From Fonticula alba ATCC 38817 (lineage: Eukaryota; Protista; Nucleariida): DNA of 64,000 bases. The stretch lies in assembly GCA_000388065.2 (NCBI GenBank), contig KB932209.1. One strand, written 5' to 3'. The notes beneath the pieces are model-generated. The model was not told where the DNA came from and searched no databases. It saw only the letters and a list, made by a program, of their open reading frames with translations. Position numbers and translations under genes: made by a program. Below are positions 10,764-46,968 of the stretch, piece after piece (the stretch's first letter is position 1; each line of letters starts with the position of its first letter).

Positions 10764-13700
10764 ATGGGCACGCAGCCTGTTGTAGCATGGCGCCGAGGCC
10801 GGGCACCTTCGGGGCACCGCTGCTCCCTGCTGCTGGCGCGCCTGGCTCTGGCTGTGTTGCTGGGATCCCTACTCGGCATCGCGCATGGGGAGGATGCATA
10901 CTTGCATGCGGCATCGTACCCCGTTATGCCGTACAGCCGACCACTGGTCTACTCGGTGCCAGCCAGCCACCCCTCCACCGCCAGCGAGCACAGCAGTACG
11001 AAGTACATCCAAACCCGGATCCAGTCGGATACATTGAGCAGCCTGGCCGAGATTCGTTGGGGAGCCTTTTTCGGCAGTTCCCCATATGGCCTCCATGGCT
11101 CGTTCCCTGGTGCAACGGTTCCCGAAAACTTCATGTACCTGACCAGGGATCTGGCCACCAGCCCGCTCGTCGTGTGGCACAGCCGGAGCATGGTGGGCTT
11201 CTTCGACTCGAGCATCGCCCATCCACTTCCAGACGGGAACACCGAGCTCCTTGCCGGGTTGGCCTTCGGACAATCCCAGGCCGACTTGCTCGGCCTCACC
11301 GGCACCCCGGGCCAAGTTCGAACCATCTTCCTGGCCAGCATGGATGCCGACGACCTGGAAATATCGGAGGTCAGCCTGCCTCCCGTGGGGCCGGGGCCCA
11401 GCGTGGCCGCGGCCGGGGTCGGTCGGTCCTTCTATCTGGCCCATGACGACCACGTCATGTACCTGTCCGTGGACAATCCGGACGCCTCTGTCTCCGTGAA
11501 TATCGGAAGTCCAGTGAACGCTTTGCAGATCGCGGCCACGCGCCTTTTCCCCCCCACTAGCGGGTGTTCGGATTTCGCGGACATACTTCTGCTCCTGGAT
11601 GACCAGGTGATGGTATTCTCCTGCTTCCATGGCCAGTCCGCCGGAAGGGCATCCAGTGCTTGGCCCGTGGGGGCGCCCTCGGCCGGGGCGCGGCTCTTGG
11701 TCGCACCGGTGGCCGCCATGCATGACAGCACCACGCCCTTCTACTTGGTCCTGCCCGGGGCTGCTTCCTCCCGAGATCGTCTATGGATGGCGGTTGCCGA
11801 TGGGGAGGATCTCTCCTGGCGGCGAGTGGTCCTACCACCGAGCATTTCGGACCTCGGTGACCTGCAGCTGGTTCGCTTGCGAACCACCGACACCGGGCCC
11901 GGTCGGTGGACGCTGCTGTCCAAGAACACCGCCCTCTTCGGATCGCAGGACTTCGCTTGCGAAAGCGATGACAGTGTCCAGTGTGACGGGCCTAGCTCGT
12001 CCTCCGGGTCGGTGACAGGATGGGCCTGTGTCGCTGGCCGTGCCAGGTCTGCCTCCGTGTCGCCTGGTCGTCTCTGCGCCGGATGCGCGGACGGCTGGTA
12101 CCTCAGTCGGCAAGCTGGTATGCGTGGTTGTCCCTTCTTCGGTGGCCCGACCTGGCCGCCGGTCGCCGGTATCCTGATGTGCCCGCAGCGATGACTGACC
12201 CCGTGCATGCCCTGTGCTCCCCCCCCCCCCCGGTGGCCGGATTGCCTCGCCTGCCAGATGAAGTGCCCTTCTCCCAGCCGAGCCATGCTTGTACCCAGTG
12301 CCCCTTCGCCAATTGTCGGACCTGTGTGCCCAACGACTGTTATGTGTGCAACCAGGGCTTCCTGCTGGAAAGGAGCGGCTCAAATGGCTCCACCATCTGT
12401 GTGGCCACCTGCTCGGCCGGGTACACGCAAGTGGCCGACACCTGCCAGCCGGTTGGGCAATCGCCGCCGGCCCTGGCACCATCCACGGCGGAGCTAGAGA
12501 TCCTGCCCAGCTTGAATCCGACGGACCGAGTCACCTGCGCCAAGCAAACGTGGCTAGCGATTGATGAGACCTCCGGGCGGCTGAAAGTCCCCGCTCCCGG
12601 TCTTGCGACCACCGGCAGTGGTATGCTCCTCTTCACGAAGGAGAAGAAGATCTACTTCATGTTGGCCGAGGACATTGGCCAGGAATTGAAGCCCTCCCTG
12701 CGCGAGGTGGACGGCTTGGAGTCCGTCCCCTCGGCCGACGTGGTGGACTTCGCCGAGGCCGGGCCCTTTGTCCACAACAACCGGCTGCTGTATTTGCTGG
12801 TCTTCTGCCTGGACAATCGGGACACCTATAGCAGTTGGCTGTCATGCGAGGGGCCGGACAGCTGCATTGCCACTGCCACCAGCCCGGTCAAGGCTAATAT
12901 CGCGGGCTGCCTCGGCGCCGAGCGCCTCGATGGAGAGCTTATTCTTTTACGGCGTAATAACTGGCTTCTGACGCTGATCAGTCCCATTCCATCTACTCAA
13001 TCAGTGGGGTTTGTGCTCCTCAGTGGCAGCACGGGCATGGTCAGCTTGCCGGGGCCCGTGTTGCCGGGGCTTTCGGTCCCGACTTTGGACAGGTGGCTGT
13101 TCTCGGCTAGCAGCGATGGCCATGCCATGGCCGCTCGACGTGAGCTCATCCTCGCGGCCGACTCGCGAAGGCAGATGCTCGCGGGGCAGTTCCTTTCCGG
13201 CTCGTCGGACGCCGATGGGGCATTCGTCCCGGTGGCCATGCATCGCAATGCATACACCATGGAGGAGGTGGTCTTTTGCAAGTTGCTCGGCACCGAGTGG
13301 GTGGTCCTGCATCCCCCGGGGAATATGCTGCCCGCTGGCCGGTCTTTGGACCTGCCCACCCGGCGGCTGGTCCTCGGGGTCCTGCCCAAGATGTTGGAAA
13401 TCCCCCCGAGTCAACATGTGAATGTCCTCTTCCAGGGGATTCTCCTGCCAGATGCCGGGACCGAGTATCCAAGCGCGCTGATCCTGCTGACGGGCACCTT
13501 CCTCGGGGTGTCGCTGTACCATTGCCCACAGGGGGAGTTCCGGACGTGTAACCTCCAGCCGGCGGTCTTTATGCCGCTGCCGGAAAGCCTGCGAGTTCTG
13601 ACCCAGAGTCGAACCTGGACGTCGGTGATCGTCCGGTCTCCCGGCACCTCGGGCTCCATGCCCGAGATGCCTCTCCTGCAGGGGTACAACTTGCGGTTCT

Positions 13701-16700
13701 TGTCCTCCTCGCCGACCGTCGGGGCGGTGGTCTTTTCCCTGGTGCTGGCCTGTCCCGAGGGGACTTGGCCCAATGCCGAGGACCATGTGTGTCAAGCCTG
13801 CGCGGCTGACTGTGCCACTTGCGTCTCCGCCGTCGGGTGTGCCACTTGTCGCACGGACTCCTATCTGGGCGCCGACCAGTCCTGCCACGCATGTCATATT
13901 TCCTGTGCTCGATGTGAAGATGCCGGCAGTTGTGTCGCATGTCGGCCGGGGCTGGTGTTCCTCGGGACCGATGTGCAGGTGCCGTCCCTGTGCGGGGGGG
14001 CCTGCCTGCCGGGCCAGTACATCGGTGCTGGCCGGTGCGCCGAGTGCGACGCCAGCTGCGAGCTGTGTGCCGGGAGCGCGGCCGCCTGCCAGGTGTGCGC
14101 CGATGGCTTCCGCTGGGCCAGCCGGCCGGCGCCCGGGGCCACCGGGACATGCGTGCCCTGCGCGTCGGGCTGTGCCTCCTGCACGGCAGACAAATGCCTG
14201 GCCTGCGAGGCGGGCCTCTTCCTGGCATCGGACGGGACATGTGTGAGCACGTGCCCGGCCGGGGCCTGGCCCAATGGGGAGTCCTGCCAGCCGTGCGACA
14301 TCTCGTGTGCCACCTGCACCGGCGGCGGCGGGGCCGACCAGTGCACCGGCTGTGGGGTGGGCTTGGACTTCGTCGAGAGCGCCCCCGGCGTCGGGGCATG
14401 TGTTTCCGGCTGCGACGAAGGCCAGTACCGGGACCCGGACGGGCTGACTTGCCTGCCGTGCGACGCGGCCTGTGCCNNNNNNNNNNCCCCCGGCGTCGGG
14501 GCATGTGTTTCCGGCTGCGACGAAGGCCAGTACCGGGACCCGGACGGGCTGACTTGCCTGCCGTGCGACGCGGCCTGTGCCGCTTGCAATGGTCCCTCGG
14601 ACCAGGATTGCTGGCAGTGCCGGAATGGGATACTTCAGGATGGCGACTGTGTGCAGTCCTGTGCCGGGTCGCATGTGGCCCTGGCCGGGAGGTGTGTATC
14701 TTGCCATGCGTCGTGTGCCGAGTGCTCCGGCGTGCGGAGCACCGAGTGCCTGCCGGCCTGCCCGGGCGACTTGCTCCCACTACCGGCTGGGCAGTCGCCG
14801 ATGCGCTGTGTGCCTGCCTGTCCGGTGGGCTACGGTGCCCTGTCCGGTGGATGCACCGCCTGTGCGGCCCACTGCGCCGCCTGCCCCGAAGCATCGAGCG
14901 CCTGTGCCCAGTGCGAGCGTGGGTGGCTCCTGGCCGGGTCGCAGTGCGTGGCTTCCTGTCCGGGGGACACCTTCCTCCTGGGTAGCATTTGTGCCCCGTG
15001 TCATGGAAGCTGTGGCACTTGCTCCGGGCCGGATGACAACCACTGTGTCACCTGCCCCGTGGGCACCTTCCTGCAGATGGACAACCGCTGCCAGGGGTCC
15101 TGCGCCGAGGGGACATTCCGAAGTGGCGACACATGCCTGCCCTGCAGCGAGGCATGTGCCTCGTGCTCCGACGCCGGGTCCGACAAGTGCACTGGCTGCG
15201 CGGCGGGCCGTGTGCTGCACCAGGGCACCTGCTTGCCGACCTGCCCGACGGGGTTCTTCAAGCAAGACGGCGCGTGCCACGCATGTGACGAGTCCTGCGC
15301 GGCCTGCATCAGCAGTGCCATTTGCACGGCCTGCAAGGGCCAGGATATGCTCCAGCCCGGGGGGACATGTGGCCCGGGCTGCCCGGGTGGGTGGGTTTCT
15401 TGCGCCTCCCGAGGCCAGTGCCTGGCTTGCAGGGAAAATTGCACCGAGTGCCTTTCATTCGGTGATGAGTGCCAAGTACTGTGCATGGCATGTGACCCGG
15501 GCTTTTTCCTCTCTTCCGGGGATTGCCACGAGGCCTGTCCGGCGGGGGAGTTTGCGGCCGCAGGGTCGGCCGTGTGCCAGTCCTGCGGCAACACCTGTGA
15601 GACCTGCTCCGGCTCGGGGGACTTCTGCACCGGCTGCCATTCGGGCCTTCTCCTGCCGCAAGAGGGTAAGTGTGTGCCTGCCTGTCCGGCTGCCTCGGCT
15701 CCGAGGGGCGGCGTGTGTGTCAGCTGCCTGGCCGGATGCGAGCAGTGCGACACGGCCCCAGGTCATCCTGGTGAGTGCACCCTCACCGGGGACGGGTCAC
15801 CGGTCTGCCCGGACATTGGCACTTGCGATCGCTGCATGGCGGGTCTCCTCCTGCTCAATGGGGGTGCCTGTGTGGAAGCCTGCCCGGCTGGGTACTTTGC
15901 CGACATGGACAGCCAGCTGGGCAGCTGTGTTCGCTGCCATGAAAGCTGCGCCGAGTCCTGCACCGGACCCGGGGTGGAAGGGTGCAAGTCTCCCGGGCGG
16001 TCGGGCAATTCGCGCATCGGCCTGGCCATCGGTCTGTCTGTGGGTCTGCTGCTGCTGCTGCTGCTGCTCATCCTTCTGGCGGCCTTGTGGCTGTTCTTTG
16101 CGCGCCGGCGAGGCACTCGGCCAATGAAGCCGGCCAACGGTGGCCTTCATGATGAGGATGCCACCATGATGAACACCCTGCTGGAGCTGGCCCTACCCGG
16201 GGCCATCCTGGTCAGTGTGGATGCGGACTTCGCGCCGGTGGCTGAGCAGCCCATGGGGGCCGGGGCCCAGGCCAGCGTCTTCGCCGCGCGGGCCATCGGT
16301 GCCGGGATTTCCGCTCGGCTAGGCTGCCCGGAGACGGTGGCCATCAAGCGCATGAAGGCCGACGCCATGAAGCCCACACATGTGGCCATGTTCCACAATG
16401 AGATCGCCCTCATGTGGTCCTTGCGCCAGCATGGGAACATCGTGCGCCTTTATGGATACAGCGAGGCGCCGCCGGCCATCGTCATGGAGCGCTTCGATAC
16501 GGACCTGCGCACGCTGCTCCTTTCGGCCGTGCCCCTGAGCCAGCTGGAGCTGCTGCACATTTGTCGCGAGTGGGCCACCGGGCTGGAGGCCATGCACGCG
16601 CACGGGGTGGCCCACTGCGACCTGAAGCCGGCCAATGTGTTCGTCAGCCAGGGCTCCTCGGCGGCTGGCTCTTGGCAGGTGGCTCTCGGGGATTTGGGCA

Positions 16701-17104
16701 CCTCTCGAAACCTGAGCACCGTCCGGTCTTCGGCCCTGCTGGACACCATGCCCCAGCTGAATGCCCTGTCTGTGAGGTACGCCTCGCCGGAGGTCATTGT
16801 GGCCATCAGGCGCAAGGCTCCCCTGGACCCGGAGCTTTTCTTCCCGGCCGACATCTACAGCGCGGCCATCATGCTGCATGAGTGCCTTTCACAGGCCACG
16901 CCTTGGCCGAGCTTGGGCCTCCAGGACATCATGCTGGCCGTGATTGGCGGGACTCGGCCCGAGGTGGCCGCCTTGACGGTGGATGCGGCGGATTTGGTGC
17001 AGGCGGCCTGGCAGGAGAACCCCTCTCGGCGACCCTCGGCGGCCGTCTTCCGCCAACGATGTGCGGCCCTGTTCGTGGTGGCCGGTGGCTTGGACACCTC
17101 TTGA
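10764..17104 (+). CDS. Receptor-like TKL-type kinase 1: signal peptide, modules A and B, furin-like Cys-rich repeats, TM, non-RD kinase; join(10764..12117,12258..17104), ~2030 aa after removing a 105-nt artefact
   Basis: Signal peptide LLLARLALAVLLGSLLGIAHG; many CxxCxxxCxxC repeats; TM IGLAIGLSVGLLLLLLLLILLAALWLFFA followed by RRR. Kinase motifs GAGAQASV, VAIK, NE, HCDLKPAN (16613), DLG (16691), YASPE, DIYSAA and RRPS. Phase-1 intron GTATGC(12118)..CAG(12257). Confidence 0.9.

Positions 17105-17874: not shown

Positions 17875-17876
<2 letters not shown>

Positions 17877-17920
<44 letters not shown>
17877..17920. repeat. (TC)n microsatellite
   Basis: About 22 perfect units. Confidence 0.9.

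Positions 17921-17922
<2 letters not shown>

Positions 17923-19261: not shown

Positions 19262-19263
<2 letters not shown>

Positions 19264-19302
<39 letters not shown>
19264..19302. repeat. (GT)n microsatellite upstream of kinase 2
   Basis: Directly visible. Confidence 0.9.
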
Positions 19303-19306
<4 letters not shown>

Positions 19307-19881: not shown

Positions 19882-22800
19882 ATGGCTTCGCCGATGACCG
19901 GTGGCCGGGCCCTGCGCCGGCCTCCGATTGGGCCAGCCCCCTGCCCGAGACCCTTAATGCTCTTCCCGCTGGTGTTGCTCCTGCTCCTGGTGGCCACCAC
20001 ATCGCGAGGCGAGACGATCCTCCTGCGCGAGGCCCGGTACCCTTTCACGCAGGGGTTCCTGCCGGATTCCTTTTCCACTGGGCCCGGGTCTCCCTCCATG
20101 GGTCACCGTCGGGTGGGCACCACCAAAATCACCACCATGACGCAGGAGAACTTTCAAAGCAGCGTCAACGAGTTCCGCTGGGGGGCTTTCTTCCTGGATT
20201 CGACGCGGACCGCGATCCGCGAGGGGCCCGGCGACCCGAGTGCCGCGTCCCTCTTGATCCTCCCTCAGGGCAACAATTTGTTGCCCCTCATGGTGGAGAC
20301 CACCCCGAGCACAGTCAAGTTCTTCACCTCGGCCGTCGCGCATCCCTTCCCCAGCCCGATGACCGACATCCTGACCGGCACGGCCTTGCCCAATGGCGAT
20401 GTCCTTCTCCTGGGGCTGGTCGGGCCTTCGGATCAGGGGCGATCGATTTTCTTGGCCAAACTCACGGCAGCTGGTCTGGTGGACTTGGGTGCCAATATTG
20501 GCGATGTGATGGGCCCGGCCTTGGGCGCTCCTGGAGGCGGCTCCTCCCTCTACATGGCCCATGGGTCGCAAATTCGCTATATGCACCTGGACGGGGCGGA
20601 TAGCGTGTCGTCCTATCAGCAGGAATTCCCCGCCAATGTCCTGGGCATGGTCACCACACGAGTCGTCTCCACCGACAGCCTGTGTCCCTTCCGAGCCGAT
20701 GTGGTGCTCCTGCTGGACAATGGCAAGATCCTCCTGGAGCCCTGCTTTGGCGGTGTGCCGTACATGGAGCCGATCGTGGGAGACATGCCCATCGCGGCGG
20801 ATCCGTCGAACGTTCAGCTTCTGGCGGCGCCGGCCGCCGCCGTGGCCAATGGCGTCACGCCCTTCTACCTGGTGATTGCCAATGCATCGACTTCCTCGGA
20901 TAGGCTTTGGCAGTCCCATGTGCAACAGGGAGCCCTGACGTGGAATCGGGTGATGTTGCCGTTGTCCATTCTCAAGCTGGAAAAGTTGTCCTTGGCTCGG
21001 TTGTACAGCGGCCCCGACGCCGAGCCCGGGATATGGACTCTGGTGCATGGCTCGAGGGTGCTCTACATGTCGGAGGACTTCGGGTGCCACACCGACAGCA
21101 CCATCATCTGCCCGAGCAGCACGGGCTACAATAGCCACTCGAAAGGCTGGGCATGTGCCCCGGGCCATGTCGGCTCGCCATACATGGCCGACGGGCTTCT
21201 GTGTGGCGGGGGGGCGGATGGCTTTTTCCTGGACCGACCGGCCGGTATGTCCTCCCCCCTGGCCGGGGTTCTTGTCTTGGTCCTGCCTTGTGTGCTTCCT
21301 TGTTGATTGACCTGGCTTCCTCCTGCTCCCTCATGTCCTTTCACTGCCGACCCAGATGAGGCGCCCTTCTCTCGGCCGGGCCACCAATGCAAGCGCTGTC
21401 CCCAGGCGAATTGCCTATCCTGCAATGCGGAGGGGTGTCTCCTGTGTCATTTCAACTTCCACCCACAGATCCCCAGCGCCGCAGGTGGTGCCACCACCTG
21501 TGTGTCCAGCTGCTCGCCTGGGTTTAGCCTGGTGGCCGGGGTCTGTCGGCCCAGCAGCCCCCCCCTGCCGAACATCCATTGGGCCCTGCCGGCTCCCTTC
21601 GCCTTTCTTGGACTGGATCCCGGCGACCGGATCACGGCCCTGGGGGAGAGCTGGCTGTCGGTGGACACGCACACCGGGCAGCCGGTCATCCCGGCCGTCG
21701 ATGACGTCCGTGGCCCCGGGCCGCGGGTGCTGCTGTTCACGGAGCAGCGCAGGACCTATATCATGGCCGCGAGCGACGTCGGCCAGCCCGGGCAGCCGAC
21801 CTTTCGGCCGGTTTCCCTGCTGGACCCACATCCGGCCGCGCCGACGATTGGCTTTGCCGAGCTCGGCCCCTTTGTGTTCGGTGGATCGGTCGTGTACATG
21901 GTGGCTTTGTGTGGGGCATCTGGCGCGTCGCAGATCGTGTCGCTGAAGTGTTCGGGCCCGGTTGCCCCGTGCGTGCCCTCCAGTCGGGCATCTCAAAGTG
22001 TCCCAGGCGGGGGGTACTCCCAGGCGCGGCGTTTGAGCTCCACAAGCGCCATCATGCCCATCGGCCACGATGAGATGACTGTCATCCGGGTCGATCCGCC
22101 GGCCGAGGAGGCCCGGTTCTTGCTTCTGCCGGCCACCGGGGCCGTCAGCCTGCCGGCCAAAGTGGAGGCCGGTACTCGAGCCCGACCTGACTTCGGGGAC
22201 TGGCTCGTGTGGACCACCCAGCTGACAAAGGCCACGGCCGTGCCGTTGTCCCTCCTGAACAATGACCCGCGCATGAATGCGCTGGCTGGGCTCTTCATGT
22301 CGAGCTTGCCGAACACCGGCAACTCATATATGCCGGTGACCATTCCCCGCGGCCGGGGGTCCGGTTTGGTGGAGTTGGTCTTTGTCCAGGTGGCCGGTAC
22401 TGAGTGGCACATTATCCGGTCCCCGGGGGACATGTTGCCGTCTGGCCGGTCGGTGGATTTGGCATCTCAGCGCCATGCGCTCGGGTCCTTCCCGAGGGAC
22501 CTGCCTCCCAACAACCAGGGCATCTTGAATATCGTCCTTCAGGGCGTGGAGCTCACGTCCGGCAGCTCCACCTATCCCAGTGCCTTGCTGCTGATAACGC
22601 GCACCTTTGTCGGGGTGTCGTTGTTGCACTGTCCCGGCGGTGCTACCGGGTCGTGTGTCCTGCTGCCGGCCACCTTCGCGGTCCTTCCGCCGGAGTACAG
22701 CCCCCCGCAGGGGACACGAACTTGGCTGCAGGCCGTGGTGAAGCCGGGCGCCGGCCTGGCCAGCCAGGACTCGGGCGCCCTGCCCGCGGGTATTGTGCTG

Positions 22801-32800: not shown

Positions 32801-33115
32801 CTGCTGGCGGCCGTCCGTCGAGGCACTGCGCTCGAGCAGCACCTCCTCTTCCCGGCAGACATCTATGCTGCGGCCATTTTGCTGAATGAGTGTCTGTCGC
32901 GGACCATCCCCTGGGATGGGCTGAGCCTGCAGCAGATCTCGGATGCGGTGCAGGTGGGCGATCGTCCGCCAGTTGGCGGAGATCCTCCAGCTGGCTTGAT
33001 GGACTTGGTGCATGCTGCCTGGCAGCCCGATCCCGAGCGTCGTCCTGCGGCGGCGATCTTCCGCCAGCAATGCTCGGCTTTCTTTGTGGCGGCCGATGGT
33101 CTGTCCCAAGGCTGA
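26868..33115 (+). CDS. Receptor-like kinase 3 (paralog); join(26868..28224,28424..33115) with an in-frame TGA at 29938..29940 and gap 30306..31025; possible pseudogene or recoded gene
   Basis: Signal peptide MLPLLVGVLLSVLLSARG; EVRWGTFF; phase-1 intron GTGCGC(28225)..CAG(28423). The frame continues past the TGA as DQSCATCSGPGPEAC. TM plus a complete kinase with GAGTQASV, VAIK, HCDLKPGN (32627), DLG and YAAPE. Confidence 0.82.
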
Positions 33116-36100: not shown

Positions 36101-38079
36101 CCCCTTGGCCCGAGGCCGGCGCCGAGCCTCGGGACGCGCATCCCTCCGGTGCCCATCCATTCGTGGGCCCTGCCCAAAGACGGCCATGCGCCAGCTGCAG
36201 GAAGCTGCCACTCGGAAGGGGTCCAGCGGAGTCCGGACCCTGAGTGAGCATTATGCTGGTTGCCGCGATGGTGGTTTTTTTTTTTCACCAAAGTCGACGC
36301 CCGAGACAGCCTCATGGTAAGCAGCCTCATCGGCGGGCGAGGCATGGCCATCTTGATTGGGTCGCGGTGGAGGGCACCATGCCCGGCATTCAGGCCTGGG
36401 CGGTCCGCCAGCCTCCACTTACCCGCGCATGCGGCATGCCTTCAGCGGTGGCCGGGTGGCGTCGCGACACCAGGGTATCAGCCCGGCAACGCAACCGGCA
36501 TATTCTCCTCGCACGGTGCCCCGTGCGCCTGTGCCCGGCTTGGAGGGCATGTGGTTCGGCTTTGTGGCCGGCAGTGGCCATGGGGGCTGTTTCGTCGCAG
36601 GTTGCACGCGGCTGCCAGCCGGACCGGGGCCTTGGGAATCAATTGCCCTGGATCCTGTCCGCCCGACAGGGCGACCGCCGGTCCGCATTGTCCCTGCTGT
36701 CTGGGATGCCGCGCCTGCTGATGTTGGTGGAGGGGGGCGGGAGTCCTTCCGGTGGATCCTGTGCGAATGTGCGGGCTTCCTTTTTTTTTCCCTCTTCATT
36801 TCGGTCTTCCTCGCGTAGTGAGTCGTCCCTCGCCGCTGGAGATGGTCCCGACGCGGGTCCTGGCCGCGAATCGGCCAGGGCGTCGGCCGGCAAGGGAATA
36901 TCCCACCGGAAGGCTGGCCGGTCCGGCGAGCTATCCGGCCAGCAGCGCACTTGCGGCATGGTTCCCCCTCCCGTCCCGTGGCGGCTTTCCCCCGAGACCC
37001 CACCGGCGGGCCCTTTCCGAGGGGGAGCCCAGCCGGCCGGGAGTTCCCTCCGTTCCGGGCTGACTCGGGTGCCGGTGCTCAAGACCAGTTCCCGTGGGTT
37101 GGCCTGCCTGGCCGGGAACTGGGGGTCCGGACCATGTCCCCCTCCTGCCCTGCCGGCGGTCCTTTGGGGTGGCGAGGCGAGGCGCTCTGTCTTTTGCGGG
37201 TCGGCCCGCTGGGCCGCTGGCGGTCCGTGGGGCTGTGGGTAGTCAGCAGCACCGGCGACCGCCGGCAGCCGAGCAGCCTCTCCATACCCGCTCGTATTGC
37301 GGACCCATGGGTGGTATGTCAGGTGGCTGGGTTTCTCCCCGGGCTGGCAGTCGGCGCCCGGGGTCCTTGGGCCTGTGTATACATGCATGTGTGTGTGTAT
37401 CGCGTGTGCGACGCGGCATGTGCCCCTTTCACTGGTTTGAAGCCCGGTCGGCCGGGTGCACAGCTTGGCTTTCGAAAGCCCGGCAGCATAGCTGAGCCGA
37501 AGTCGATCGGTGGATCAGGGGTATGGGCGGATGTGGGCCAGCGGGACAGGTGGCCCGGTGTCGAGGGCAGTCCCTCGGGCATGCCCCGCACGACCGGCGC
37601 CTTTGGGCACCGGATGGCTGGCGATGGCTCCCGCATGTGGTGTGTCCATTTGTATCCCGCTTGTGGCCATTCCCCGGGATGCGCCATGTGTCGGCCGGAG
37701 ATCGGTGATGGCCGCGATCGGCGAGCAGGCGTCTTCCCCGTGCGAGTGGCCCTGCTTGACCGGGGAGGAGGGGCCTGTCGGCGATGCTCGGCGCGCCAAG
37801 GGCCATGCCCGCGGCAGGCCGCTCGCCGAAAGTGCCGCCTCCGGCCGGGTGTCCGGCCGCCGCCTCGGTGAACATGCCCGGGGCCTGGGGGCACCTGCAA
37901 TCCGTGCTACTGGAGGTGAGTCCCTTGAAAGGGGCCTCACCACGACCTGTGGATGGGTCGACGCTTCGGCCACTTTGCTCTTGCTGGCGGGGCTTGCCCC
38001 ATTGTTTGGGGTTTTTTTTTCTTCCTCCCGGGGTCGGTGGCCATGTCGGCTGACATGCGCCCTGCACCGGGGTCCGTGG

Positions 38080-38720
38080 GGGCTGGGAGACATGCTCCAA
38101 ATGAGGAAAAGGAGGGCCGTTCTCCGAGCCGGCGGGCTTGTGGCCGCTGCTCCGCCGCCCTTATGGCTGGCATTGGTGCTGGAAAAGACCCATGCGCGTG
38201 GACTGTCCCGGGTCCGGTGTGCGGTGGAGGCAATCCGAGCCGCTGTCCGGCGTCATCCGCCCGGAGTGCGGCCGGGGAGGTGGAGCAATCTCTCGTCGGT
38301 CGGTGGCCTGCCGGAGTCCGGCGAGCGGCCCCCAGCGACCTGGGCCCATCGCGGGGCCTGAGCACCGGCCGGGCGTCGGCCCTGGGACACTCGCTGCCCG
38401 AGGCCAATGTCATGAGGGTGCGCCGCGCCGGAGATCGTGGCCGCCTTCCAGCATGGTGTTCCCCCGGGGCGGGGGCATTCCCTGTCCGCGGGCATTGACA
38501 ACGCCACGGCGATGCCGCAGGAGCGCCCGACCCGCGCGGCTGTGTGGCCCGGCAAGGGCATCAAGCGGAGCCGGACTGGACGCAGACAGGTGAGCCGGCG
38601 CCCCGGCTGCTCCCGGTGCAGGGTCTTGCCCGCGGGCGGGCTTGCCGGAGGATGCCGGCCGGCGGCCGTCGGGTGCTGTGTCTCGGCAGGGGATGTGTCG
38701 CACTAGGCCGGGGGCTGCCC
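38080..38720 (+). pseudogene. Decayed remnant of a fifth receptor-kinase domain
   Basis: Frame-shifted homology to the neighbouring kinases, in correct order: catgctccaaatgag ~ MFQNE; ALVLEKTHARGL ~ ATGLEAMHAHGV; ctgagcaccggccgggcgtcggccctgggacactcgctgcccgag ~ kinase 4 gagcgccgaccggtcgtcggccctggtgcacacgctgcccgag; gccgccttccagcatggtgttccc ~ ggcgccttccagcgtggtgtcccc; acccgcgcggctgtgtggccc ~ acccgcgcggccgtgtggcct; PEDAGRRPSGAVSRQGMC ~ QDDPARRPSAAALRQRC. HCDLKP and DLG are not recognisable. Confidence 0.8.
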
Positions 38721-38980
38721 GAGGTCCAGCCTTACGGCTTCGCCAAATGTGCCGACCATCAGCCCGGTTGCTTGGGCGGCCCGGCGCCACCAGGCAGCAG
38801 GGCCCGTCGGGGTACCTTGTGGCTGTCGATGTCGCGACCGGGAGATCGGCCCCGGGGTGGATGCCTGACGTCCGGACCTGGCCGAGTGCACATCCTCGGC
38901 CGGCCATGGTGGCGACGCCTGCGCCCGTCGGTGGCAGGGCGAGGGGGCCGGAGAGTGTAGGCACTCGGACCGGGCGGCAC

Positions 38981-38989
<9 letters not shown>

Positions 38990-39026
<37 letters not shown>
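38990..39026. repeat. (GA)n microsatellite
   Basis: Directly visible. Confidence 0.9.
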
Positions 39027-39029
<3 letters not shown>

Positions 39030-40019
39030 GGTCACCACGACCCCGGTGAGGATGCGGGTCCCCGCTCGGAGGCAGAGAGCATGCCACCCCCCTGCCCCCG
39101 CGCCCAACACCACACCCGTGGAGGACGGTCGGGCGTCCGGCTGCGCTGAACGCCCGGCCCCCGAAGCACACCCTGATATCTCGGCGCCCGCGAATGCCCG
39201 CCATCCGGCATGCTCCCCCCCCCCCCCCCCCCCCCCCCNNNNNNNNNNCCCCCCCCCCCCCCCCTCGCCCCCATATTGCCCCTCCTCCCCCCGTCGCCTG
39301 GGCTGGTGTTCGGACGCTGCGTGCCCCCGGATCGCGGGCCCTCAGGGCCGCATTTCTCCCCTTGCTACCCCTGTGTGTTGCGGGAGGACGTTTCAAACTC
39401 CTGGGAAGGATGTTCCCCCTCCGGACCCCCAGCAAGCCACCGGGCGCAGGCCACGCCGGGACCTCCTGCGTTGGACCCTGCACCACTCCACCCGGGGGCG
39501 CCCGATCTTGGCGCATGGCCCGACGCCGTGTTTTCCGGCCACAGAGGCCCGGCCCCGGGGCGTGCGACCGTGTTGCGAGCCGAAACAGCCCGACCCGGCC
39601 GAAGCGTTGGCATGTCGCTATGTGCCGAAAGGGTCTGGCCTCTCTCTCCGGGCACCACGCCGGCCCCGGCTCTCAGGGGGGGCGGATGGCGGAGTTGAAA
39701 AATACCTTGCACCGGGCGGCCACGGAGCGGGCTCGCTGGAACCAACATCCGCAGGCGACCCCGGCCCGAGGGGTGTCGTGGCGGGGGCCCGGCGCAGGCA
39801 GGCAGGCGGGGCCCGGACCTAAGGCGGGGAAAAGGCCGCCCCCTCCCGGCGCAGATGGCTGTCCACAGGCCAAATGCAATTCCCCTCCCTGCCCTAGTGG
39901 CCTGCACACTTTGTCCCCTCTCCCCCCCCCCCCCCCCCTCGCCGCTCTTGCCCGGGCTCGGCCCCACGCCCGCCCTTGCTTCTGCCTTGCCCCTCCAGCC
40001 ACCGGGGCCCGGGAAGGTT

Positions 40020-43000
40020 ATGGCACCCCTGCGGCCATCCTGGCGGCGCCGGTCGCCGGCCATCCTGGTGGCCCTCTCATGGCTTGTCCTTCTTTTTGCC
40101 GGGCCCGCACGGGCCCAGGACCTGGTGCTGTATTCGGCCCCGCATCCGGCCCTGTCGACTGACAAGGTGCCCGTGCTTGTGCCCTTTGTGGGAGTACCAT
40201 CCTCGGCCAGTGTCTTCGGCGTGGACAATGCCTTCCACTTCCACGAGCAGAATCTCCCCGTGAACAACAGCCCCGAAATCCGGTGGGGATCCTTCTTCGC
40301 GGCGGTGCGGTTCTACATGAACCGGGGGCGAAGCACCGACATCTCGGGCTCCCGGGTGATGCTCATCCACCAATCGAGCGGGTCGATTCCGATGGCCGTC
40401 GAGCACAGCCGGAGCATGGTCGCAATGTACACCTCGAGTGTGGAGCACTCGCTGCCGGGGCCGCAGACCGAGTTGCTGGCCGGCGTTGTGTCCAGCTCCA
40501 ACAGCGCGGATGTCCTCGGTTTGACTGGCTCGGGGAGCACCGATCGCTCGGTCTTCCTGGGCACGCTCAGCCACTCGTCGCTGACCCCCCTGTCGCATGA
40601 TGTCCCCTCGATCGACGGGCCGGCAATGGCGGTGCCCGGCGTCGGCCGGTCCTTCTACTTGGCCTGGCTCAGGCACCTTTTGCACATCAGCCACCAGGGG
40701 TCTGGCTATTCCACAGGCCCGACCCTGAACTTCAGTGGTGCCGTCGTGCAGATGGCCGCCACCCGGGTGAAATCCCCGGCCAGTACGTGCTCCGATGCGG
40801 CGGATGTGGTTCTCATCCAGGACAATCGTGTCCTGTCGGTGTTGGTCTGTCACGGCGTCGCCCCCACCGAGAGTCTGGTGGAGATGTTGCTGCCGAGTGG
40901 GTTGCCTCTGGCAGGAGTTCGAATTCTGGCGGCGCCAGCCTCCACCATGAACCAGGGGGTGTCTCCTTTCTATTTGGTCTTTCCCCAAGCGCCGGATCCG
41001 CGGGATCGCCTCTGGGAGATCACCATCCCGGTGGAGGACCTTGTCTGGCGCCGGGTCCTGCTGCCTCCGAGAGTGGTCCAAGTGGCTGACATGCAGCTTG
41101 GGCGCTTTGCTTTGCACTCGGCCCCGGCCCCATGGCGCCTGATGGACCGGACCAACACCGTGCTCCTGGAGCCGGGCGATATGGGCTGCCAGCTTGATGA
41201 AAGCATTGTGTGCGACACGGCGGACCAGGTGACCGGCGCGCCGGGCGGGTGGCTTTGTGCCCCGGGCCAGGTCGAGTCGCCGTATGTCTCGTCGAGGCAC
41301 CTGTGTGCCGGGTGCGCCGATGGCCGGTTCCTGAAACGGTCGCGCAGTATGTCCACCCCGAGGGTCACATCCATTCACCATGTGCCTGACGTATGCGCCC
41401 TTGGCCATGGGGGGCGGGGGNNNNNNNNNNNNNNNNNNNNNNNNNGGGGGGGGGGGGCGGGGCGGGGGTCTTTTCTCTGGGCGCTCCTCTTCTTACTCCT
41501 CCGGGTCATTTGTTTCCCTGCTCCTCCGGGCCATTTGTCGCCTCCTGCCCGTCCGTCAGGCGAATTGCCCTTCTCCCTTTCGAGCCACCTCTGCCAGGTC
41601 TGTGCGCAGGGCGGATGCCGGACATGCGACGAGCACCACTGCCTCGTGTGCCAGGAGGGCCTCCTGCCCGAGCCGAGTGGCCCCGGGGGGGACACCGTCT
41701 GCGTGTCCAGCTGCTCGGCGGGATTTGTCCCGGCCGCCGGGGTATGCCGGCCAGATGCTTCGCCACCGCTGCCGGCCTCCCTGCGTATTGTGGGGCCGGA
41801 AAAGATGCCGGGCTTGGCCAGCGGCGACTCGATCACCGCCATCGGGGAGACCTGGCTCCTGTTGAGCGACCAGGATCCCCGGCCAGTCATTCCGGCCACC
41901 AACACCGGCCCGGCCATCGGGGCCCTGATCTTCACCGAGCAGCAGAAGGTTTACTTCATGCCGACAGGCCAAATTGGCAACCCGATGAAGCCGCCGCTGA
42001 AGGAGGTGAACCTGCTGGCGCAGCCCCTCTCCAGCCCGGTGATCGCGTCGGCCGAGCTGGGTCCCTTTTTGAGCGAGGGCAAATGGCTGTATGTGGTGGT
42101 CATGAGCGATCGTTCCGGCAGCGTGTCCCAGGCTTGGCTGTCGTGCACCGGCGCGCAGGGCCCCTGCAAGGCCGACAGCCCGGCCGTGGCACAGTCCTAC
42201 GTGCAGAGCCCTTGCTTTGCCCTGCGGCGCCTTGGCGTGGACAGCATCGTGCTGTATACCATGTCCGATGGAGTGTACCTGCTCCGGGCGAATGCCAGCT
42301 CCAAGAGCCTGGCCCGGTCGCGGATCGACGCGCGCGAGGTGCTCCGGCTGCCGGCGTCCTCGGCAGCCGGAGCTCGAAGCGAGCTGGCCGACTGGTTCCT
42401 GTGGTCGGACCTCACCGGGGGGGCCACTGCCAGCCCGGTGGTGTTTGTGAATTCGGGCGATTCGCGCAGCCAGTCCTTGCTCCGGCGCTTCTTGCCGGGG
42501 GCCAATGTCCCCGGGGTCCCCCATGTGCCGGTGCTCCTGGCACGAGGGCGCGATGACCTGGCGCCGGAGCTGGTCTTCTCGCAGACCACCGGCGCCGATT
42601 GGACGGTCCTCCGAGTGCCGGGGGACATGCTGCCGGGGGGGCGCTCCGTGGATGTGCCCTTCAGTCGCCATGTGTTGGGCCGGCTGCCGGAGGCCCTGGG
42701 GCCCGACAGTGGCTCGACCCCGGCGGTTCACTTCCAGGGGGTGGCCCTGCCGGCCGGCGGGGTCCGGTACCCGAGCGCGTTGCTGCTGCTGGCGCGCACT
42801 TTCGTCGGGGTGTCGATGCTGCACTGTCCGGATGGGGGGGCTGGCGTGTGTGTTTTGCAGCCGGCCACCTTTGTCTCTTTGCTGGGGGAGGATCGCATTC
42901 CGACGGACGCGGCCATTTGGAGTCCGGCCATGGCCCTGGATGCCAGTGGATTGCTGGGCCCCGACCAGCTGCTGTACATGATGGCCTTCAATCCCAGCAC

Positions 43001-46000
43001 CGGGCCCAGGTCCATCCTGCTGAGGGTCAGCTGCCCGGAGGGGACGTACGGGCTCTACTGTGATCCCTGTGATGATGCGTGCCTCACATGCCGGGGCCCG
43101 GGGCCGGGGGACTGTAAAACATGCCGCCATCGGCTGCCCTCCGAGCCGGAGGTGTGCCGGGCGGCCTGCCCGGCCGGGCTGTATCCCGACCATGAGGGCA
43201 TGTGCATTTGCCATTCCAGCTGCAATGCCTGCCCCCCCGACAGCTTTGGCAATTACCTTTGCATCGAGTGTGTCACTGGCCATGTTCCGGATGTGAATGC
43301 CGGCGAGCCGGGCCGGTGCTTCGCGTGCGATGCATCCTGTGGCGAGTGCTCGCGGCCTGGCGATCCGAAAGCCTGCACCTCATGCCCACCCACCCGGTGG
43401 CTACTGGATGGGGCTTGCTATGAGCAGTGTCCCGAGGGGACGCGGCTCGATGTCGGGAATAATGTCTGCCAGCCATGCGGGCTCAATTGCCTTCTCTGCA
43501 GCATGGAGGGTGTTTGCGATGCATGCGTCGAGCGGCACTTCGCCGCTGGCGATGGGTCCTGCGCGGTGTGTGACGGATCCTGCGTCGACTGCACGGATGG
43601 CATTTCCTGCACGGCATGCCGGCCGGGGCTGGTGTTCCTCGGGACCGATGCGCAAGTGCCATCGCTTTGCGGGAGTTCCTGCCTGCCGGGCCAGTTCGTC
43701 GGTGCTGGCCGGTGCGCCGAGTGCGACGCCAGCTGCGAGTTGTGTGCCGGGAGCGCGGCCGCCTGCCAGGTGTGCGCCGATGGCTTCCGCTGGGCCGGCC
43801 GGCCGGCGGCCGGGGCCACCGGGACATGCGTGCCCTGCGCGTCGGGCTGTGCCTCCTGCACGGCAGACAAATGCCTGACCTGCGAGGCGGGCCTGTTCCT
43901 GGCATCGGACGGGACGTGTGTGAGCACGTGCCCGGCCGGGGCCTGGCCCAATGGGGAGTCCTGCCAGCCGTGCGACATCTCGTGTGCCACCTGCACCGGC
44001 GGCGGCGGGGCCGACCAGTGCACCGGCTGCGAGGAGGGCTTGGACTTCGTCGAGAGCGCCCCCGGCGTCGGGGCATGTGTTTCCGGCTGCGACGAAGGCC
44101 AGTACCGGGACCCGGACGCCCGCACCTGCCTGCCGTGCGACGCGGCCTGTGCCACATGCAACGGTCCGACCGACAAGGACTGCTGGCGCTGCCGAAAGGC
44201 GATCTTGCAAGATGGCGACTGCGTGCAGGCGTGTGCTGCCTCGTATGTGGCCGTGGCTGGGCGCTGCCTGCCGTGCCATGCTTCGTGCGCGCAATGCATG
44301 GGGGTCCGGTCGACGGAGTGTGTGCCGGCCTGCCCGAGCGAGCTGCTGGCCCTGCCGACCGGGGCGTCTCCCACGCGGTGTGTGCCGGCCTGCCCGGCGG
44401 GCTACCACACCACGGCGTCGGGGTGCTCGCCGTGCGGGTCCCATTGTGCCAGCTGCCCGGCCTCGGCGGCGTCCTGTGCCCAGTGCGAGCGCGGGTGGCT
44501 GCTGGCCAGCCCGGAGTGTGTGTCCTCCTGCCCGGGCGGCAGTCTGCCGCTGGGGAATGTGTGCGCCACCTGCCACGGGACGTGTGCCACATGCTACGGC
44601 CCGGGGGACAACAACTGCCTCTCCTGCAGCCCCGATGCTCCCTTCATGGTGGGCGGGCGGTGCCATGCCGCCTGCCCGGCCGGCACGCACGAGGTGCTGG
44701 GCGCCTGCCTGCCCTGCCACTCGACATGTGCGGCGTGCGAGGAATCCGGCGATGACCGGTGCACCGCGTGCTCGGGCGACCGGGCCCTGCTTGGGGGCGA
44801 GTGCCTGCTTGGCTGCCCTGCCGGGTTTTTTGCCGAGAACAACGTGTGCACCCAGTGCGGGCCCTCGTGCGCCACGTGTGACCGCCCGGGCAGCTGCACG
44901 GGCTGCGCCCCGGGTCGGCTACTCCAGCCGGATGGGCTGTGCGCCGTCGGCTGCCCGGCCGGGTGGACGGAGTGTGCCGCCTCGGCCGGGTGTGTCCAGT
45001 GCCCGGACCACTGCCGTGCGTGCCTCTCGCAGGGGCCCCCCTGCGAGGCCACCTGTACGGCCTGCGAGGCGGGGTATGTCCTGTCCTCGGGGCAGTGTGC
45101 CACGAGCTGCCCGGCCGGGGCCTTCCTCTCGCGGGAGTCGGGCACCTGCCAGCAGTGTGCGAGCGCCTGTCGGACTTGTGTCGAATCGGCGGACCGCTGC
45201 ACTGGCTGCGCCATGGGGGTGCTCCTGCCGGGGGAGGGCACCTGCGTGTCGGCCTGCCCGGGCGCCTCGGCGCCGGTGGATGGGGCGTGTCTCGGCTGCC
45301 CGGCCGGATGCGAGCAGTGTCGCGCGGGCCCGGGCCAGCCCGGATGCGAGCTCCAGCAGGATGGGCAGCTTGCCTGTCCCGAGGCCACTTCCTGCTCGCG
45401 CTGCATGGCGGGGCTGCTCCTGCAGGGGGACACCTGTGTGGCAGCATGTCGGAAGGACCATTACGCGGATGTGGCGGCCAATCCGCCGGCCTGCCTGCCC
45501 TGTCACAGTGGGTGTGTGAGCGGCTGCACCGGGCCGGAGCCGGCCGACTGCGACCAGCTCCCCCGGCCCACGGCGTCGCGTGTGGGCCTGGCCGTGGGTC
45601 TGTCGGTGGGGCTGCTGCTGCTGCTGGTCCTGCTGATCCTGGCGGTACTGTGCCTTGTGCGCCGGCACAACCGGCGGGCCATGCTGGCCAAGGACCTCGC
45701 CGCCCATGACGCGGATGCCACCATGCTGAACACCATCGTGGAGCTGGCCCTGCCCGGGGCCATTCTGGTGAGTGTGGACCTGGACTTCCGGCCGGTCAAT
45801 GAGCAGCTCGGTGCCGGGACCCAGGCATCGGTCTATGCGGCGCAGGCGGTGGGCACGGGGATCATGGCGCGCCTGGGCTGTCCGGATGTCGTGGCCGTGA
45901 AGAGGATGNNNNNNNNNNNNNNNNNNNNNNNNNNNNNNNNNNNNNNNNNNNNNNNNNNNNNNNNNNNNNNNNNNNNNNNNNNNNNNNNNNNNNNNNNNNN

Positions 46001-46968
46001 NNNNNNNNNNNNNNNNNNNNNNNNNNNNNNNNNNNNNNNNNNNNNNNNNNNNNNNNNNNNNNNNNNNNNNNNNNNNNNNNNNNNNNNNNNNNNNNNNNNN
46101 NNNNNNNNNNNNNNNNNNNNNNNNNNNNNNNNNNNNNNNNNNNNNNNNNNNNNNNNNNNNNNNNNNNNNNNNNNNNNNNNNNNNNNNNNNNNNNNNNNNN
46201 NNNNNNNNNNNNNNNNNNNNNNNNNNNNNNNNNNNNNNNNNNNNNNNNNNNNNNNNNNNNNNNNNNNNNNNNNNNNNNNNNNNNNNNNNNNNNNNNNNNN
46301 NNNNNNNNNNNNNNNNNNNNNNNNNNNNNNNNNNNNNNNNNNNNNNNNNNNNNNNNNNNNNNNNNNNNNNNNNNNNNNNNNNNNNNNNNNNNNNNNNNNN
46401 NNNNNNNNNNNNNNNNNNNNNNNNNNNNNNNNNNNNNNNNNNNNNNNNNNNNNNNNNNNNNNNNNNNNNNNNNNNNNNNNNNNNNNNNNNNNNNNNNNNN
46501 NNNNNNNNNNNNNNNNNNNNNNNNNNNNNNNNNNNNNNNNNNNNNNNNNNNNNGAGCGCCGACCGGTCGTCGGCCCTGGTGCACACGCTGCCCGAGCTGA
46601 ATGCCATGACGGTGCGGTACGCGGCGCCCGAGGTGATCGGCGCCTTCCAGCGTGGTGTCCCCCTGGAGCCGGAGCTCCTCTTCGCGGGGGACATTTACAG
46701 CGCGGCGGTCATGCTCAACGAGTGCCTGACCCGCGCGGCCGTGTGGCCTGGGAAGGATCTCCAGGGCATCGTGGCGGCTGTGATGGCCGGCGGGCGACCG
46801 GACATGTCGGCCCTTCCGGCTGCCGGGCCTTTTGCCGCGGCCGGAGACCTTATCCAGGCAGCTTGGCAGGATGACCCGGCGCGCCGGCCCTCGGCGGCGG
46901 CCTTGCGCCAACGGTGTGCCGGGCTGTTTGTGGCCGCCGGAGGTTTGGGCAGCGACTCGGGGCCGTGA
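40020..46968 (+). CDS. Receptor-like kinase 4 (paralog); join(40020..41346,41560..46968) with gap 45909..46553 in the kinase
   Basis: Signal peptide MAPLRPSWRRRSPAILVALSWLVLLFAGPARA; PEIRWGSFF; phase-1 intron GTATGT(41347)..CAG(41559); long furin-like stalk; TM VGLAVGLSVGLLLLLVLLILAVLCLV; GAGTQASV, VAVKRM. After the gap it reads SADRSSALVHTLPELNAMTVRYAAPE...DIYSAA...RRPS to the stop at 46968. Confidence 0.88.

What the first reader, a model, noticed from the sequence alone, without database searches (positions are those of the whole stretch)
10764..46968. Head-to-tail array of four giant receptor kinases plus a pseudogene: candidate recognition (self/non-self or prey/pathogen) locus
Seen: four co-oriented paralogs share one architecture (signal peptide, module A, one Cys module, module B, furin-like stalk, TM, kinase) and one intron position. 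Their N-terminal modules are strongly diverged while the TM, juxtamembrane and kinase regions are conserved. One copy has an internal stop and a fifth is decayed. Knowledge: tandem arrays with variable ectodomains, constant signalling domains and birth-and-death turnover typify plant RLK immune clusters and allorecognition loci such as Dictyostelium tgr. Inference: an uncharacterised recognition-receptor system in a protist.
Basis: partly seen in the sequence, partly recalled or inferred. Interest (0 to 1): 0.78.

Follow-up and report, generated by a model that had tools for sequence, protein, structure and literature searches.

The report
Fonticula double-propeller receptor kinase array
This stretch of the slime-mould-like amoeba Fonticula alba holds four neighbouring genes, plus one broken relic, for huge surface receptors from a family seen only in this species; their outer sensor heads differ greatly, and what they sense is untested.

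Summary
Four co-oriented genes (about 10764-17104, 19882-26253, 26868-33115 and 40020-46968) share one build. It runs signal peptide, 7-bladed propeller A, a small Cys module split by one phase-1 intron, an unrelated propeller B, a furin-like stalk of about 720 residues, one TM helix, and a TKL-type non-RD kinase.

- **Divergence:** the heads are 29-36% identical and the TM/kinase part 60-79%.
- **Stops:** the TGA at 21304 lies in copy 2's intron. The real in-frame stop is the TGA at 29938 in copy 3, at a Cys position.
- **The "fifth copy":** it is only a relic of about 1.1 kb (37617-38725).
- **Gaps:** every coding gap abuts a tract 91-100% identical between two copies, so gene conversion probably broke the assembly. 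A seventh gap (45909-46553), not listed in the finding, removes part of copy 4's kinase. Most of copy 2's kinase is also unread.
- **Family range:** an exhaustive profile search with propeller B found about 47 proteins, and every one I traced except a spurious bacterial hit is from F. alba.
- **Age:** the copies are old. dS is saturated, ω is below 1, and they are not each other's nearest kin.

A recognition role stays untested. The scan has already found this family on other DNA (s1-065467, s1-065459, s1-065524).

The parts
10764..12117 (+). Copy 1 exon 1: signal peptide (10764-10889), propeller A (10890-11957) and the first half of the Cys module
   Evidence: The AF2 model has pLDDT 73.5 and 28 strands, i.e. 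7 blades. VIA Z is 16.6 against WD40-type propellers.
12118..12257 (+). Copy 1 phase-1 intron (GTATGC...CAG)
   Evidence: The annotated protein P0001 uses the same junction.
12258..17104 (+). Copy 1 exon 2: rest of the Cys module, propeller B (12473-13756), furin-like stalk (13757-16015), TM (16016-16102), kinase (16253-17044, catalytic loop HCDLKPAN at 16613-16636) and stop at 17102-17104. About 2,031 aa once the artefactual 105-nt duplication is removed.
   Evidence: Pfam Pkinase scores 101.8 bits against a cut-off of 31.7; Furin-like_2 and VSP also match.
14477..14486 (.). 10-N gap between identical 95-nt flanks (14382-14476 equals 14487-14581). This is an unmerged contig overlap, not missing sequence.
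   Evidence: Copy 4 has this 95-nt stretch only once.
19882..25382 (+). Copy 2: exon 1 19882-21244, intron 21245-21355 (contains the TGA at 21304), exon 2 21356-23258, then a gap, then 23814-25382 (lower stalk, TM 25059-25136, Gly loop, VAVK). The rest of the kinase lies in gap 25383-26253.
26868..33115 (+). Copy 3: exon 1 26868-28224, intron 28225-28423 (GTGCGC donor), exon 2 28424-30305 with an in-frame TGA at 29938-29940, gap 30306-31025, then 31026-33115 (stalk, TM 32039-32122, complete kinase with HCDLKPGN at 32627-32650).
   Evidence: GenBank model P0048 ends at this TGA.
37617..38725 (+). Relic of a fifth copy: a stalk-block fragment (37617-37907, 60% nt identity to copy 4) and a frameshifted kinase C-lobe (38285-38725, 66% nt identity to copy 4).
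   Evidence: No module A or B remnant and no Pfam hit anywhere in 33.1-39.7 kb.
40020..46968 (+). Copy 4: exon 1 40020-41346, intron 41347-41559 (holds the 25-N gap), exon 2 41560-45908 (propeller B 41775-43037, TM 45582-45659, VAVK), gap 45909-46553, then kinase C-lobe 46554-46965 and the stop.
   Evidence: P0051 (H696_05294) is 100% identical to copy 4's module A, stalk block and kinase C-lobe.
13937..14476 (+). Conversion tract: 95% nt identity to copy 4 (43614-44153), against a background of 55-67%.
   Evidence: Similar tracts occur elsewhere: copies 2 and 3 are 98-99% identical at 23077-23258 / 30124-30305, copies 2 and 4 are 98% after 23814 and 100% over the last 30 codons before 25383 / 45909, and copies 3 and 4 are 91% after 31026.

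Best explanation
The locus holds four tandem, co-oriented members, plus one relic, of a large gene family seen only in Fonticula alba. The family encodes giant type-I transmembrane receptor Ser/Thr kinases.

Build. Each protein of about 2,000-2,150 aa carries two 7-bladed beta-propellers that are unrelated in sequence. A small Cys module joins them. They sit on a rod of about 15 furin-like CxxC repeats, followed by one TM helix and a TKL-type kinase that is mostly non-RD (HCD). All catalytic residues are present where the sequence is readable.

Likely mechanism (inferred, not shown). The propeller heads bind extracellular ligands. Binding changes the pairing or clustering of receptors, and this activates the cytoplasmic kinase.

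History. The heads are old, strongly diverged lineages, so each copy probably has its own ligand. Short tracts in the upper stalk and the kinase N-lobe are kept near-identical between copies by gene conversion. That also explains why the assembly breaks at exactly those places.
For: - Architecture and intron.
- Organism and annotation: (P0001, F. alba, 100% identity).
- Propeller folds: AF2 pLDDT 73.5 and 76.5; Foldseek; VIA Z 16.6 and 18.9 over about 300 residues.
- A and B unrelated in sequence: hhalign aligns only the Cys modules.
- Kinase: Pfam; nearest solved structures are B-Raf and Raf-1 at E 1e-15; motifs intact in copies 1 and 3.
- Family size: 47 F. alba proteins of 886-2819 aa share the kinase at 49-68% identity (one at 41%), with 10 more among shorter models. 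Local profiles find module A in at least 25 and module B in at least 20 of them.
- Family range: the profile of module B hit 49 of 1.84 billion representatives. All 20 newly traced ids are F. alba except one spurious bacterial repeat protein.
- Shared intron: a paralog on another scaffold has the same phase-1 intron.
- Conversion tracts next to every coding gap.
- Gene models elsewhere in the genome end at the same two tracts.
Against: - No ligand, expression or phosphorylation data exist.
- The kinases of copies 2 and 4 are largely unread.
- Copy 3 has an in-frame TGA, so at least one member may be dead or may make only a truncated ectodomain.
- The structure models rest on shallow alignments of 7 sequences.
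- TKL placement rests on the nearest solved structures and on GenBank names, not on a kinome-wide tree.
- Absence from the closest relatives (Parvularia, Nuclearia) holds only if their proteomes are in the searched library. I could not verify that.
Confidence: 0.8

Rival explanations
1. This is a recognition locus under diversifying selection. The variable propeller heads would tell self from non-self during aggregation, or would discriminate bacterial prey or pathogens. The array would turn over by birth and death.
For: - Large single-species family in tandem arrays.
- Heads far more diverged than the kinase.
- A stop-bearing copy and a relic.
- Gene-conversion tracts.
- 35 of 50 family kinases are non-RD. 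From my own knowledge (Dardick and Ronald 2006), that trait is associated with pattern-recognition receptors.
- F. alba aggregates, and its collective invasion responds to the state of its bacterial food (PMC9097593).
Against: - Domain-wide dN/dS is below 1 (0.41-0.78) with saturated dS.
- There are no young duplicates. The array members are 29-36% identical in the heads and are interleaved with genes from other scaffolds.
- Strands and loops of the propellers differ little in conservation: 0.28 against 0.22, and 0.31 against 0.26.
- No polymorphism or expression data exist, and only one wild isolate is known.
Confidence: 0.2
2. These are adhesion and contact-signalling receptors. The propeller heads would bind partners on neighbouring Fonticula cells or on the matrix. 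They would stand in for the cadherins and integrins that the genome lacks, and would signal contact during collective invasion and fruiting.
For: - Toret et al. 2022 report actin-rich cell-cell contacts but no obvious cadherins, integrins or Dictyostelium-type adhesion molecules.
- Extracellular 7-bladed propellers (integrin alpha, LGI1 EPTP) are among the structural matches of module B.
- A long rigid stalk suits reach between cells.
Against: - The structural matches are a flat list of generic propellers, and no family stands out.
- There is no FG-GAP or any other Pfam match.
- About 50 highly diverged heads are more than adhesion needs.
Confidence: 0.15
3. The array is partly an assembly artefact or a pseudogene graveyard. 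Copy number, the pairing of gene halves and the intactness of genes would then be wrong, and the conserved tracts would be collapsed repeats or chimeric joins rather than biology.
For: - Seven gaps lie in 36 kb, and five of them are in coding sequence.
- Gap flanks are in different frames.
- One gap has duplicated flanks.
- GenBank fuses copy 2 with the 5' part of copy 3.
- There is an in-frame TGA in copy 3.
Against: - There are four distinct 5' halves and four distinct 3' halves, each 50-60% identical to the others in the lower stalk, so four genes is self-consistent.
- Copy 1 is complete, with an open frame of about 2,031 codons.
- At least 816 codons downstream of copy 3's TGA remain open, with kinase motifs intact.
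Confidence: 0.15

Closest known systems
Other Fonticula alba 'TKL protein kinase' gene models
   Same: Same propeller A, Cys module, propeller B, furin-like stalk, TM and kinase. Same phase-1 intron. Same conserved stalk block.
   Different: Nothing categorical. These four are simply further members, 30-43% identical in the heads to their nearest relatives.
EGFR / insulin-receptor ectodomain plan (L1, furin-like CR1, L2, CR2, TM, kinase)
   Same: The order is ligand-binding head, Cys-rich module, second head, Cys-rich stalk, single TM, kinase. Furin-like repeats are detected by Pfam.
   Different: The heads are 7-bladed propellers, not L-domain beta-helices, and there is no Recep_L_domain hit. 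The stalk is about 15 repeats long. The kinase is TKL-like Ser/Thr, and F. alba has no tyrosine kinases (PMC4342544).
Plant RLK/Pelle receptor kinases in tandem immune clusters
   Same: A large lineage-specific expansion in tandem arrays, with variable ectodomains, more conserved kinases, many non-RD kinases, kinase-less relatives and pseudogenes.
   Different: No LRR, LysM or lectin ectodomains. The nearest solved kinases are RAF, not IRAK or RLK. The expansion is independent, in the sister lineage of fungi. There are no young duplicates here.
Dictyostelium tgrB1/tgrC1 allorecognition genes
   Same: Surface proteins of an aggregating amoeba, in a multigene family.
   Different: From my own knowledge, tgr proteins have IPT/TIG (Ig-like) ectodomains and no kinase, work as a polymorphic ligand-receptor pair, and are highly polymorphic. 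Here there is no TIG hit, the genes lie head to tail, a kinase is present, and polymorphism is unknown.
Sema-PSI receptors (plexins, Met) and integrin alpha / LGI1 EPTP propellers
   Same: An extracellular 7-bladed propeller followed by a small Cys-rich module.
   Different: No sequence match. The structural matches are no better than to any WD40-type propeller.
Giardia variant-specific surface proteins (Pfam VSP)
   Same: CxxC-rich repeats. The Pfam VSP match is 38.3 bits against a cut-off of 31.4 in copy 1.
   Different: The match covers only short CxxC stretches of the stalk. There is no VSP-type short conserved tail; the protein carries a kinase instead.

Membership tests
Eukaryotic receptor protein kinase (type-I membrane protein with a Pkinase domain) | Pkinase domain above Pfam's gathering score | tested here: met
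   Copy 1 scores 101.8 bits against a cut-off of 31.7. Copy 3 has a complete kinase that is 64% identical to copy 1's.
Eukaryotic receptor protein kinase (type-I membrane protein with a Pkinase domain) | Catalytic residues present (Gly loop, VAIK Lys, HxD Asp, DxG Asp, APE) | tested here: met
   Copies 1 and 3 have all of them. Copies 2 and 4 show only the Gly loop and VAVK before their gaps.
Eukaryotic receptor protein kinase (type-I membrane protein with a Pkinase domain) | N-terminal signal peptide and a single TM helix between ectodomain and kinase | tested here: met
   Read from the sequence in all four copies. No dedicated predictor was run.
TKL kinase group | The kinase groups with TKL families in a kinome-wide classification | tested here: inconclusive
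   The nearest solved structures are B-Raf and Raf-1 at E 1e-15, and GenBank names the relatives 'TKL protein kinase'. No kinome tree was built.
Fonticula double-propeller receptor kinase family | Propellers A and B match the family profiles | tested here: met
   E 1e-123 to 1e-161 for all four copies.
Fonticula double-propeller receptor kinase family | Phase-1 intron inside the Cys module, at the same position | tested here: met
   All four copies and paralog P0002 on scaffold KB932222.1.
Plant RLK/Pelle family | Kinase within the RLK/Pelle/IRAK clade, with an LRR, LysM, lectin or similar ectodomain | tested here: not met
   No such ectodomain is found by Pfam, and the top solved matches are RAF only. 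The clade test itself was not run.
EGFR / insulin receptor family | Receptor L domains flanking a furin-like region, and a tyrosine kinase | tested here: not met
   No Recep_L_domain hit, and the heads are propellers. The kinase matches Pfam's Pkinase model better than its Tyr/Ser-Thr model. F. alba has no tyrosine kinases according to PMC4342544.
Dictyostelium tgr allorecognition system | IPT/TIG ectodomains, a paired polymorphic ligand and receptor, and high polymorphism between strains | tested here: not met
   No TIG hit, and the genes lie head to tail. Polymorphism cannot be tested, as only one isolate exists.
Locus under diversifying selection | dN/dS above 1 in the ligand-binding part, or positively selected surface sites | tested here: inconclusive
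   NG86 dN/dS is 0.41-0.78 in the heads with dS of 1.0-1.8, which is saturated. Site models were not run.
Selenoprotein reading of the TGA in copy 3 | SECIS element in the 3' UTR | tested here: not met
   Rfam finds no SECIS in the window at gathering score, or in 33100-34600 at E up to 1.

The most novel reading that the evidence does not exclude
The double-propeller receptor kinases would be Fonticula's own receptor repertoire, invented independently. It would sense bacteria or neighbouring cells and control the switch from solitary feeding to collective invasion and aggregation. That would be one more independent origin of a large receptor-kinase family tied to multicellular behaviour, this time in the sister lineage of fungi. 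Its ligand-binding domains would have no relatives elsewhere, and gene conversion would keep the signalling parts uniform while the heads stay distinct.
Probability: 0.2. Interest if true: 0.8.

Novelty: new variant of a known kind. Interest (0 to 1): 0.45.

Why it matters
From my own knowledge, fungi have few or no receptor kinases of this single-pass type, while animals, plants, brown algae and oomycetes each expanded their own. Here a protist on the fungal side, which forms aggregates and feeding collectives, has built about 50 or more giant receptor kinases. Their two propeller heads have no detectable relatives in 1.84 billion proteins.

If these receptors sense prey or neighbours, they offer a fresh and independent case for asking how receptor-kinase repertoires arise alongside multicellular behaviour.

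This window adds two things to what the scan already noted on other DNA. First, the array members are old lineages, patched by short gene-conversion tracts. Second, those tracts explain the assembly gaps and the broken GenBank gene models.

Tried and rejected
- **Reads.** I have no read evidence on expression, on splicing, or on whether the TGA at 29938 is real.
- **Selenocysteine at that TGA.** No SECIS element was found.
- **A and B as duplicates of one propeller.** hhalign aligns only the Cys modules.
- **A named family for A or B.** Pfam finds nothing even at E up to 1. ESM Atlas feature scores stay below 0.9, with a PLL-like lectin propeller at 0.83 as a weak lead only. The Atlas shape search and both PDB searches give flat lists of generic propellers.
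- **A full decayed fifth gene in 33.1-39.7 kb.** There are no propeller remnants and no Pfam hits, and the translations look non-coding. Only the relic at 37617-38725 is left.
- **Array-wide homogenised kinase.** The kinases of copies 1 and 3 are no closer to each other (64%) than to kinases on other scaffolds (64-69%). Homogenisation is local, not array-wide.
- **dN/dS between these paralogs as a test of selection.** dS is saturated, so the ratios are only indicative.
- **Literature.** Six searches were sent and five ran. I found no paper describing this family.
- I did not search or fold the joined exon 1 plus exon 2 protein. Each exon was handled separately, by reference.
Full report
**Organism and setting.** The window is GC-rich (64-72% outside the gaps). 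The long ORF at 11996-17101 is 100% identical to a GenBank protein named 'serine/threonine protein kinase [Fonticula alba]' (P0001). The genome is therefore Fonticula alba, assembly GCA_000388065.2. Upstream lie ordinary genes: Tam41 at 1563-2975 and a G-patch protein at 3464-4996 on the minus strand.

**The observation.**
- tblastn with copy 1 finds three more co-oriented copies and one short kinase remnant.
- Each copy starts with an ATG followed by a hydrophobic signal-like segment.
- Each has a phase-1 intron at the same homologous position inside a small Cys module. The introns are 12118-12257, 21245-21355, 28225-28423 and 41347-41559.
- GenBank's model of copy 1 uses the same junction but starts at a later Met, and so lacks the signal peptide.
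- A paralog on another scaffold (P0002, KB932222.1) has the same intron, so this gene structure is shared beyond this array.
- Profiles of modules A and B match all four copies (E 1e-123 to 1e-161) and nothing else in the window.
- All four copies have a TM helix, a Gly loop and VAIK/VAVK.

**Gaps, tested first.**
- *14477-86:* the 95 nt on each side are identical, and copy 4 has that stretch only once. This is an unmerged contig overlap, and the frame holds either way.
- *41421-45:* lies in copy 4's intron, in a G run.
- *39239-48:* lies in a non-coding poly-C run.
- *23259-23813 and 30306-31025:* these remove about 215 and 292 codons compared with copy 1. The flanks are in different frames, so the N lengths are only estimates.
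- *25383-26253:* removes copy 2's kinase after VAVK.
- *45909-46553:* a gap the program's note did not list. It removes about 120 codons of copy 4's kinase.

Every coding gap abuts a tract that is near-identical between two copies.
- Copies 2 and 3 are 98-99% identical just before their stalk gaps.
- Copies 2 and 4 are 98% identical after 23814, and 100% identical over the last 30 codons before both kinase gaps.
- Copies 3 and 4 are 91% identical after 31026.
- Copies 1 and 4 are 95% identical over 540 nt, ending at 14476.
- Gene models of the family elsewhere in the genome also end at these two tracts, the stalk block and the VAIK region.

I read this as local gene conversion that the assembler could not resolve. 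There are four distinct 5' halves and four distinct 3' halves, so a count of four genes is consistent. Which half goes with which in copies 2 and 3 rests on the scaffold alone.

**Stops and the 'fifth copy'.**
- The TGA at 21304 is intronic.
- Copy 3 has a real in-frame TGA at 29938-29940, at a Cys position of a CxxC repeat. GenBank's H696_05292 (P0048) fuses copy 2 with the 5' part of copy 3 and ends at that TGA.
- Downstream of the TGA at least 816 codons stay open, and the kinase motifs are intact. The stop is therefore young, a sequencing error, or it yields an ectodomain-only product. No SECIS element supports selenocysteine.
- The spacer at 33.1-39.7 kb has no Pfam hit and no propeller remnant. 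It holds only a stalk-block fragment (37617-37907) and a frameshifted kinase C-lobe (38285-38725).

**What the protein is.**
- Modules A and B have no Pfam family.
- AF2 models, built on alignments of seven paralogs, reach pLDDT 73.5 and 76.5 and pTM 0.74 and 0.76. Each has 28 strands, which is seven four-stranded blades.
- The structure searches give flat lists of WD40-type propellers, LGI1 EPTP and integrin alpha. Foldseek E values are 1e-6 to 1e-7, and VIA Z is 16.6 and 18.9 over about 300 residues. No family stands out.
- A and B are not detectably related to each other.
- The stalk of copy 1 is 718 residues with 16% Cys and 42 CxxC motifs, about 15 furin-like units.
- The kinase is nearest to RAF kinases among solved structures (E 1e-15). 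It has HCD (non-RD), DLG and APE. Of 50 family kinases, 31 are HCD, 4 HGD and 15 HRD.
- Suga et al. found no tyrosine kinases in Fonticula (PMC4342544).

**Family and range.**
- Kinase searches found 47 F. alba proteins of 886-2819 aa at 49-68% identity (one at 41%), and 10 more shorter ones. No other organism appeared above the thresholds, apart from one unrelated metagenomic protein at 29% identity.
- An exhaustive profile search with module B gave 49 hits among 1.84 billion representatives. All 20 new ids that I traced are F. alba, except a bacterial repeat protein matched by 13 short stretches, which I take as spurious.
- I could not confirm that the proteomes of the nearest relatives are in that library.

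**Evolution.**
- Amino-acid identity is 29-36% in A, 32-36% in B, 49-58% in the lower stalk, 61-79% in TM plus juxtamembrane, and 60-64% in the kinase.
- NG86 dN/dS is 0.41-0.78 in the heads and 0.28-0.36 in the kinase. Head dS is 1.0-1.8, which is saturated. TM plus juxtamembrane dS is only 0.23-0.62, which fits more recent exchange in the 3' half.
- In a module B tree of 58 rows, the four copies fall inside one clade of 24 (98% SH-aLRT) but are not each other's nearest kin. Copy 2 groups with genes on two other scaffolds at 99%.
- Kinase identities within the array equal those to other scaffolds.
- The array is therefore old, not a recent burst.

**Function.** Shown here: the architecture, the intact catalytic motifs, the family size and restriction to F. 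alba, and the conversion tracts. Inferred: ligand binding by the propellers and activation of the kinase through receptor pairing. The recognition reading and the adhesion reading both remain open.
- Toret et al. report that F. alba lacks obvious cadherins and integrins.
- They also report that its collective behaviour depends on the state of its bacterial food.
- They report that the organism was isolated from the wild only once (PMC9097593).

**Limits.** By rule, I searched and folded exons separately and left out the joined spliced protein. I found no paper describing this family. The scan has already reported the same family on other DNA (s1-065467, s1-065459, s1-065524 and others). My results were obtained independently here and agree with those notes.

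Noticed in passing
window 50393-53080 (minus strand): A convergent ORF encodes a furin-like/VSP-type Cys-repeat protein (Pfam Furin-like_2 at E 1.9e-8). It has no propeller A or B and no kinase, and gap 52260-52615 interrupts it. It is a different kind of Cys-repeat protein sitting next to the array.
   Followed up: partly
window 47175-47247 (-) and 48385-48458 (+): Two tRNA genes lie just downstream of copy 4 (Rfam, 66 and 58 bits).
   Followed up: no
window 56998-57174 and 57194-57370: A 177-nt stretch is repeated at 100% identity with an offset of 196 nt. It lies inside the gene that another note describes as six NSF-type N-domains. It could be a real repeat or an assembly duplication like the one at 14477.
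   Followed up: no
window 10764-10925, 19882-33115 and 40020-46968, against the GenBank models: The GenBank models are imperfect here. H696_0529x (P0001) starts at a downstream Met and so lacks the signal peptide. H696_05292 (P0048) fuses copy 2 with the 5' part of copy 3. P0086 (674 aa) probably holds copy 3's 3' half as a separate 'gene', though I did not map it. H696_05294 (P0051) matches copy 4.
   Followed up: partly
family members outside the window (P0049, P0052, P0053, P0056, P0062, P0091): Many family gene models end at the same two places, the conserved stalk block (RPGLVFL...) or the kinase VAIK region. This suggests the assembly collapses at these near-identical tracts across the whole genome.
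   Followed up: partly
family members outside the window (P0057, P0064, P0075/P0083): Some members have a TM helix and only a short cytoplasmic tail. They are kinase-less relatives, comparable to plant receptor-like proteins, unless gaps have truncated them.
   Followed up: no
window 28390-28410, 39220-39265 and 41405-41460: Long homopolymer runs occur in introns and spacers: about 20 or more C in copy 3's intron, poly-C at the 39239 gap, and poly-G at the 41421 gap. Two of them coincide with assembly gaps.
   Followed up: no
L001 8210-8273 (P0002 gene on KB932222.1): The annotated model skips about 30 codons around a G run by calling a second 'intron'. This may instead be a homopolymer frameshift in the assembly.
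   Followed up: no
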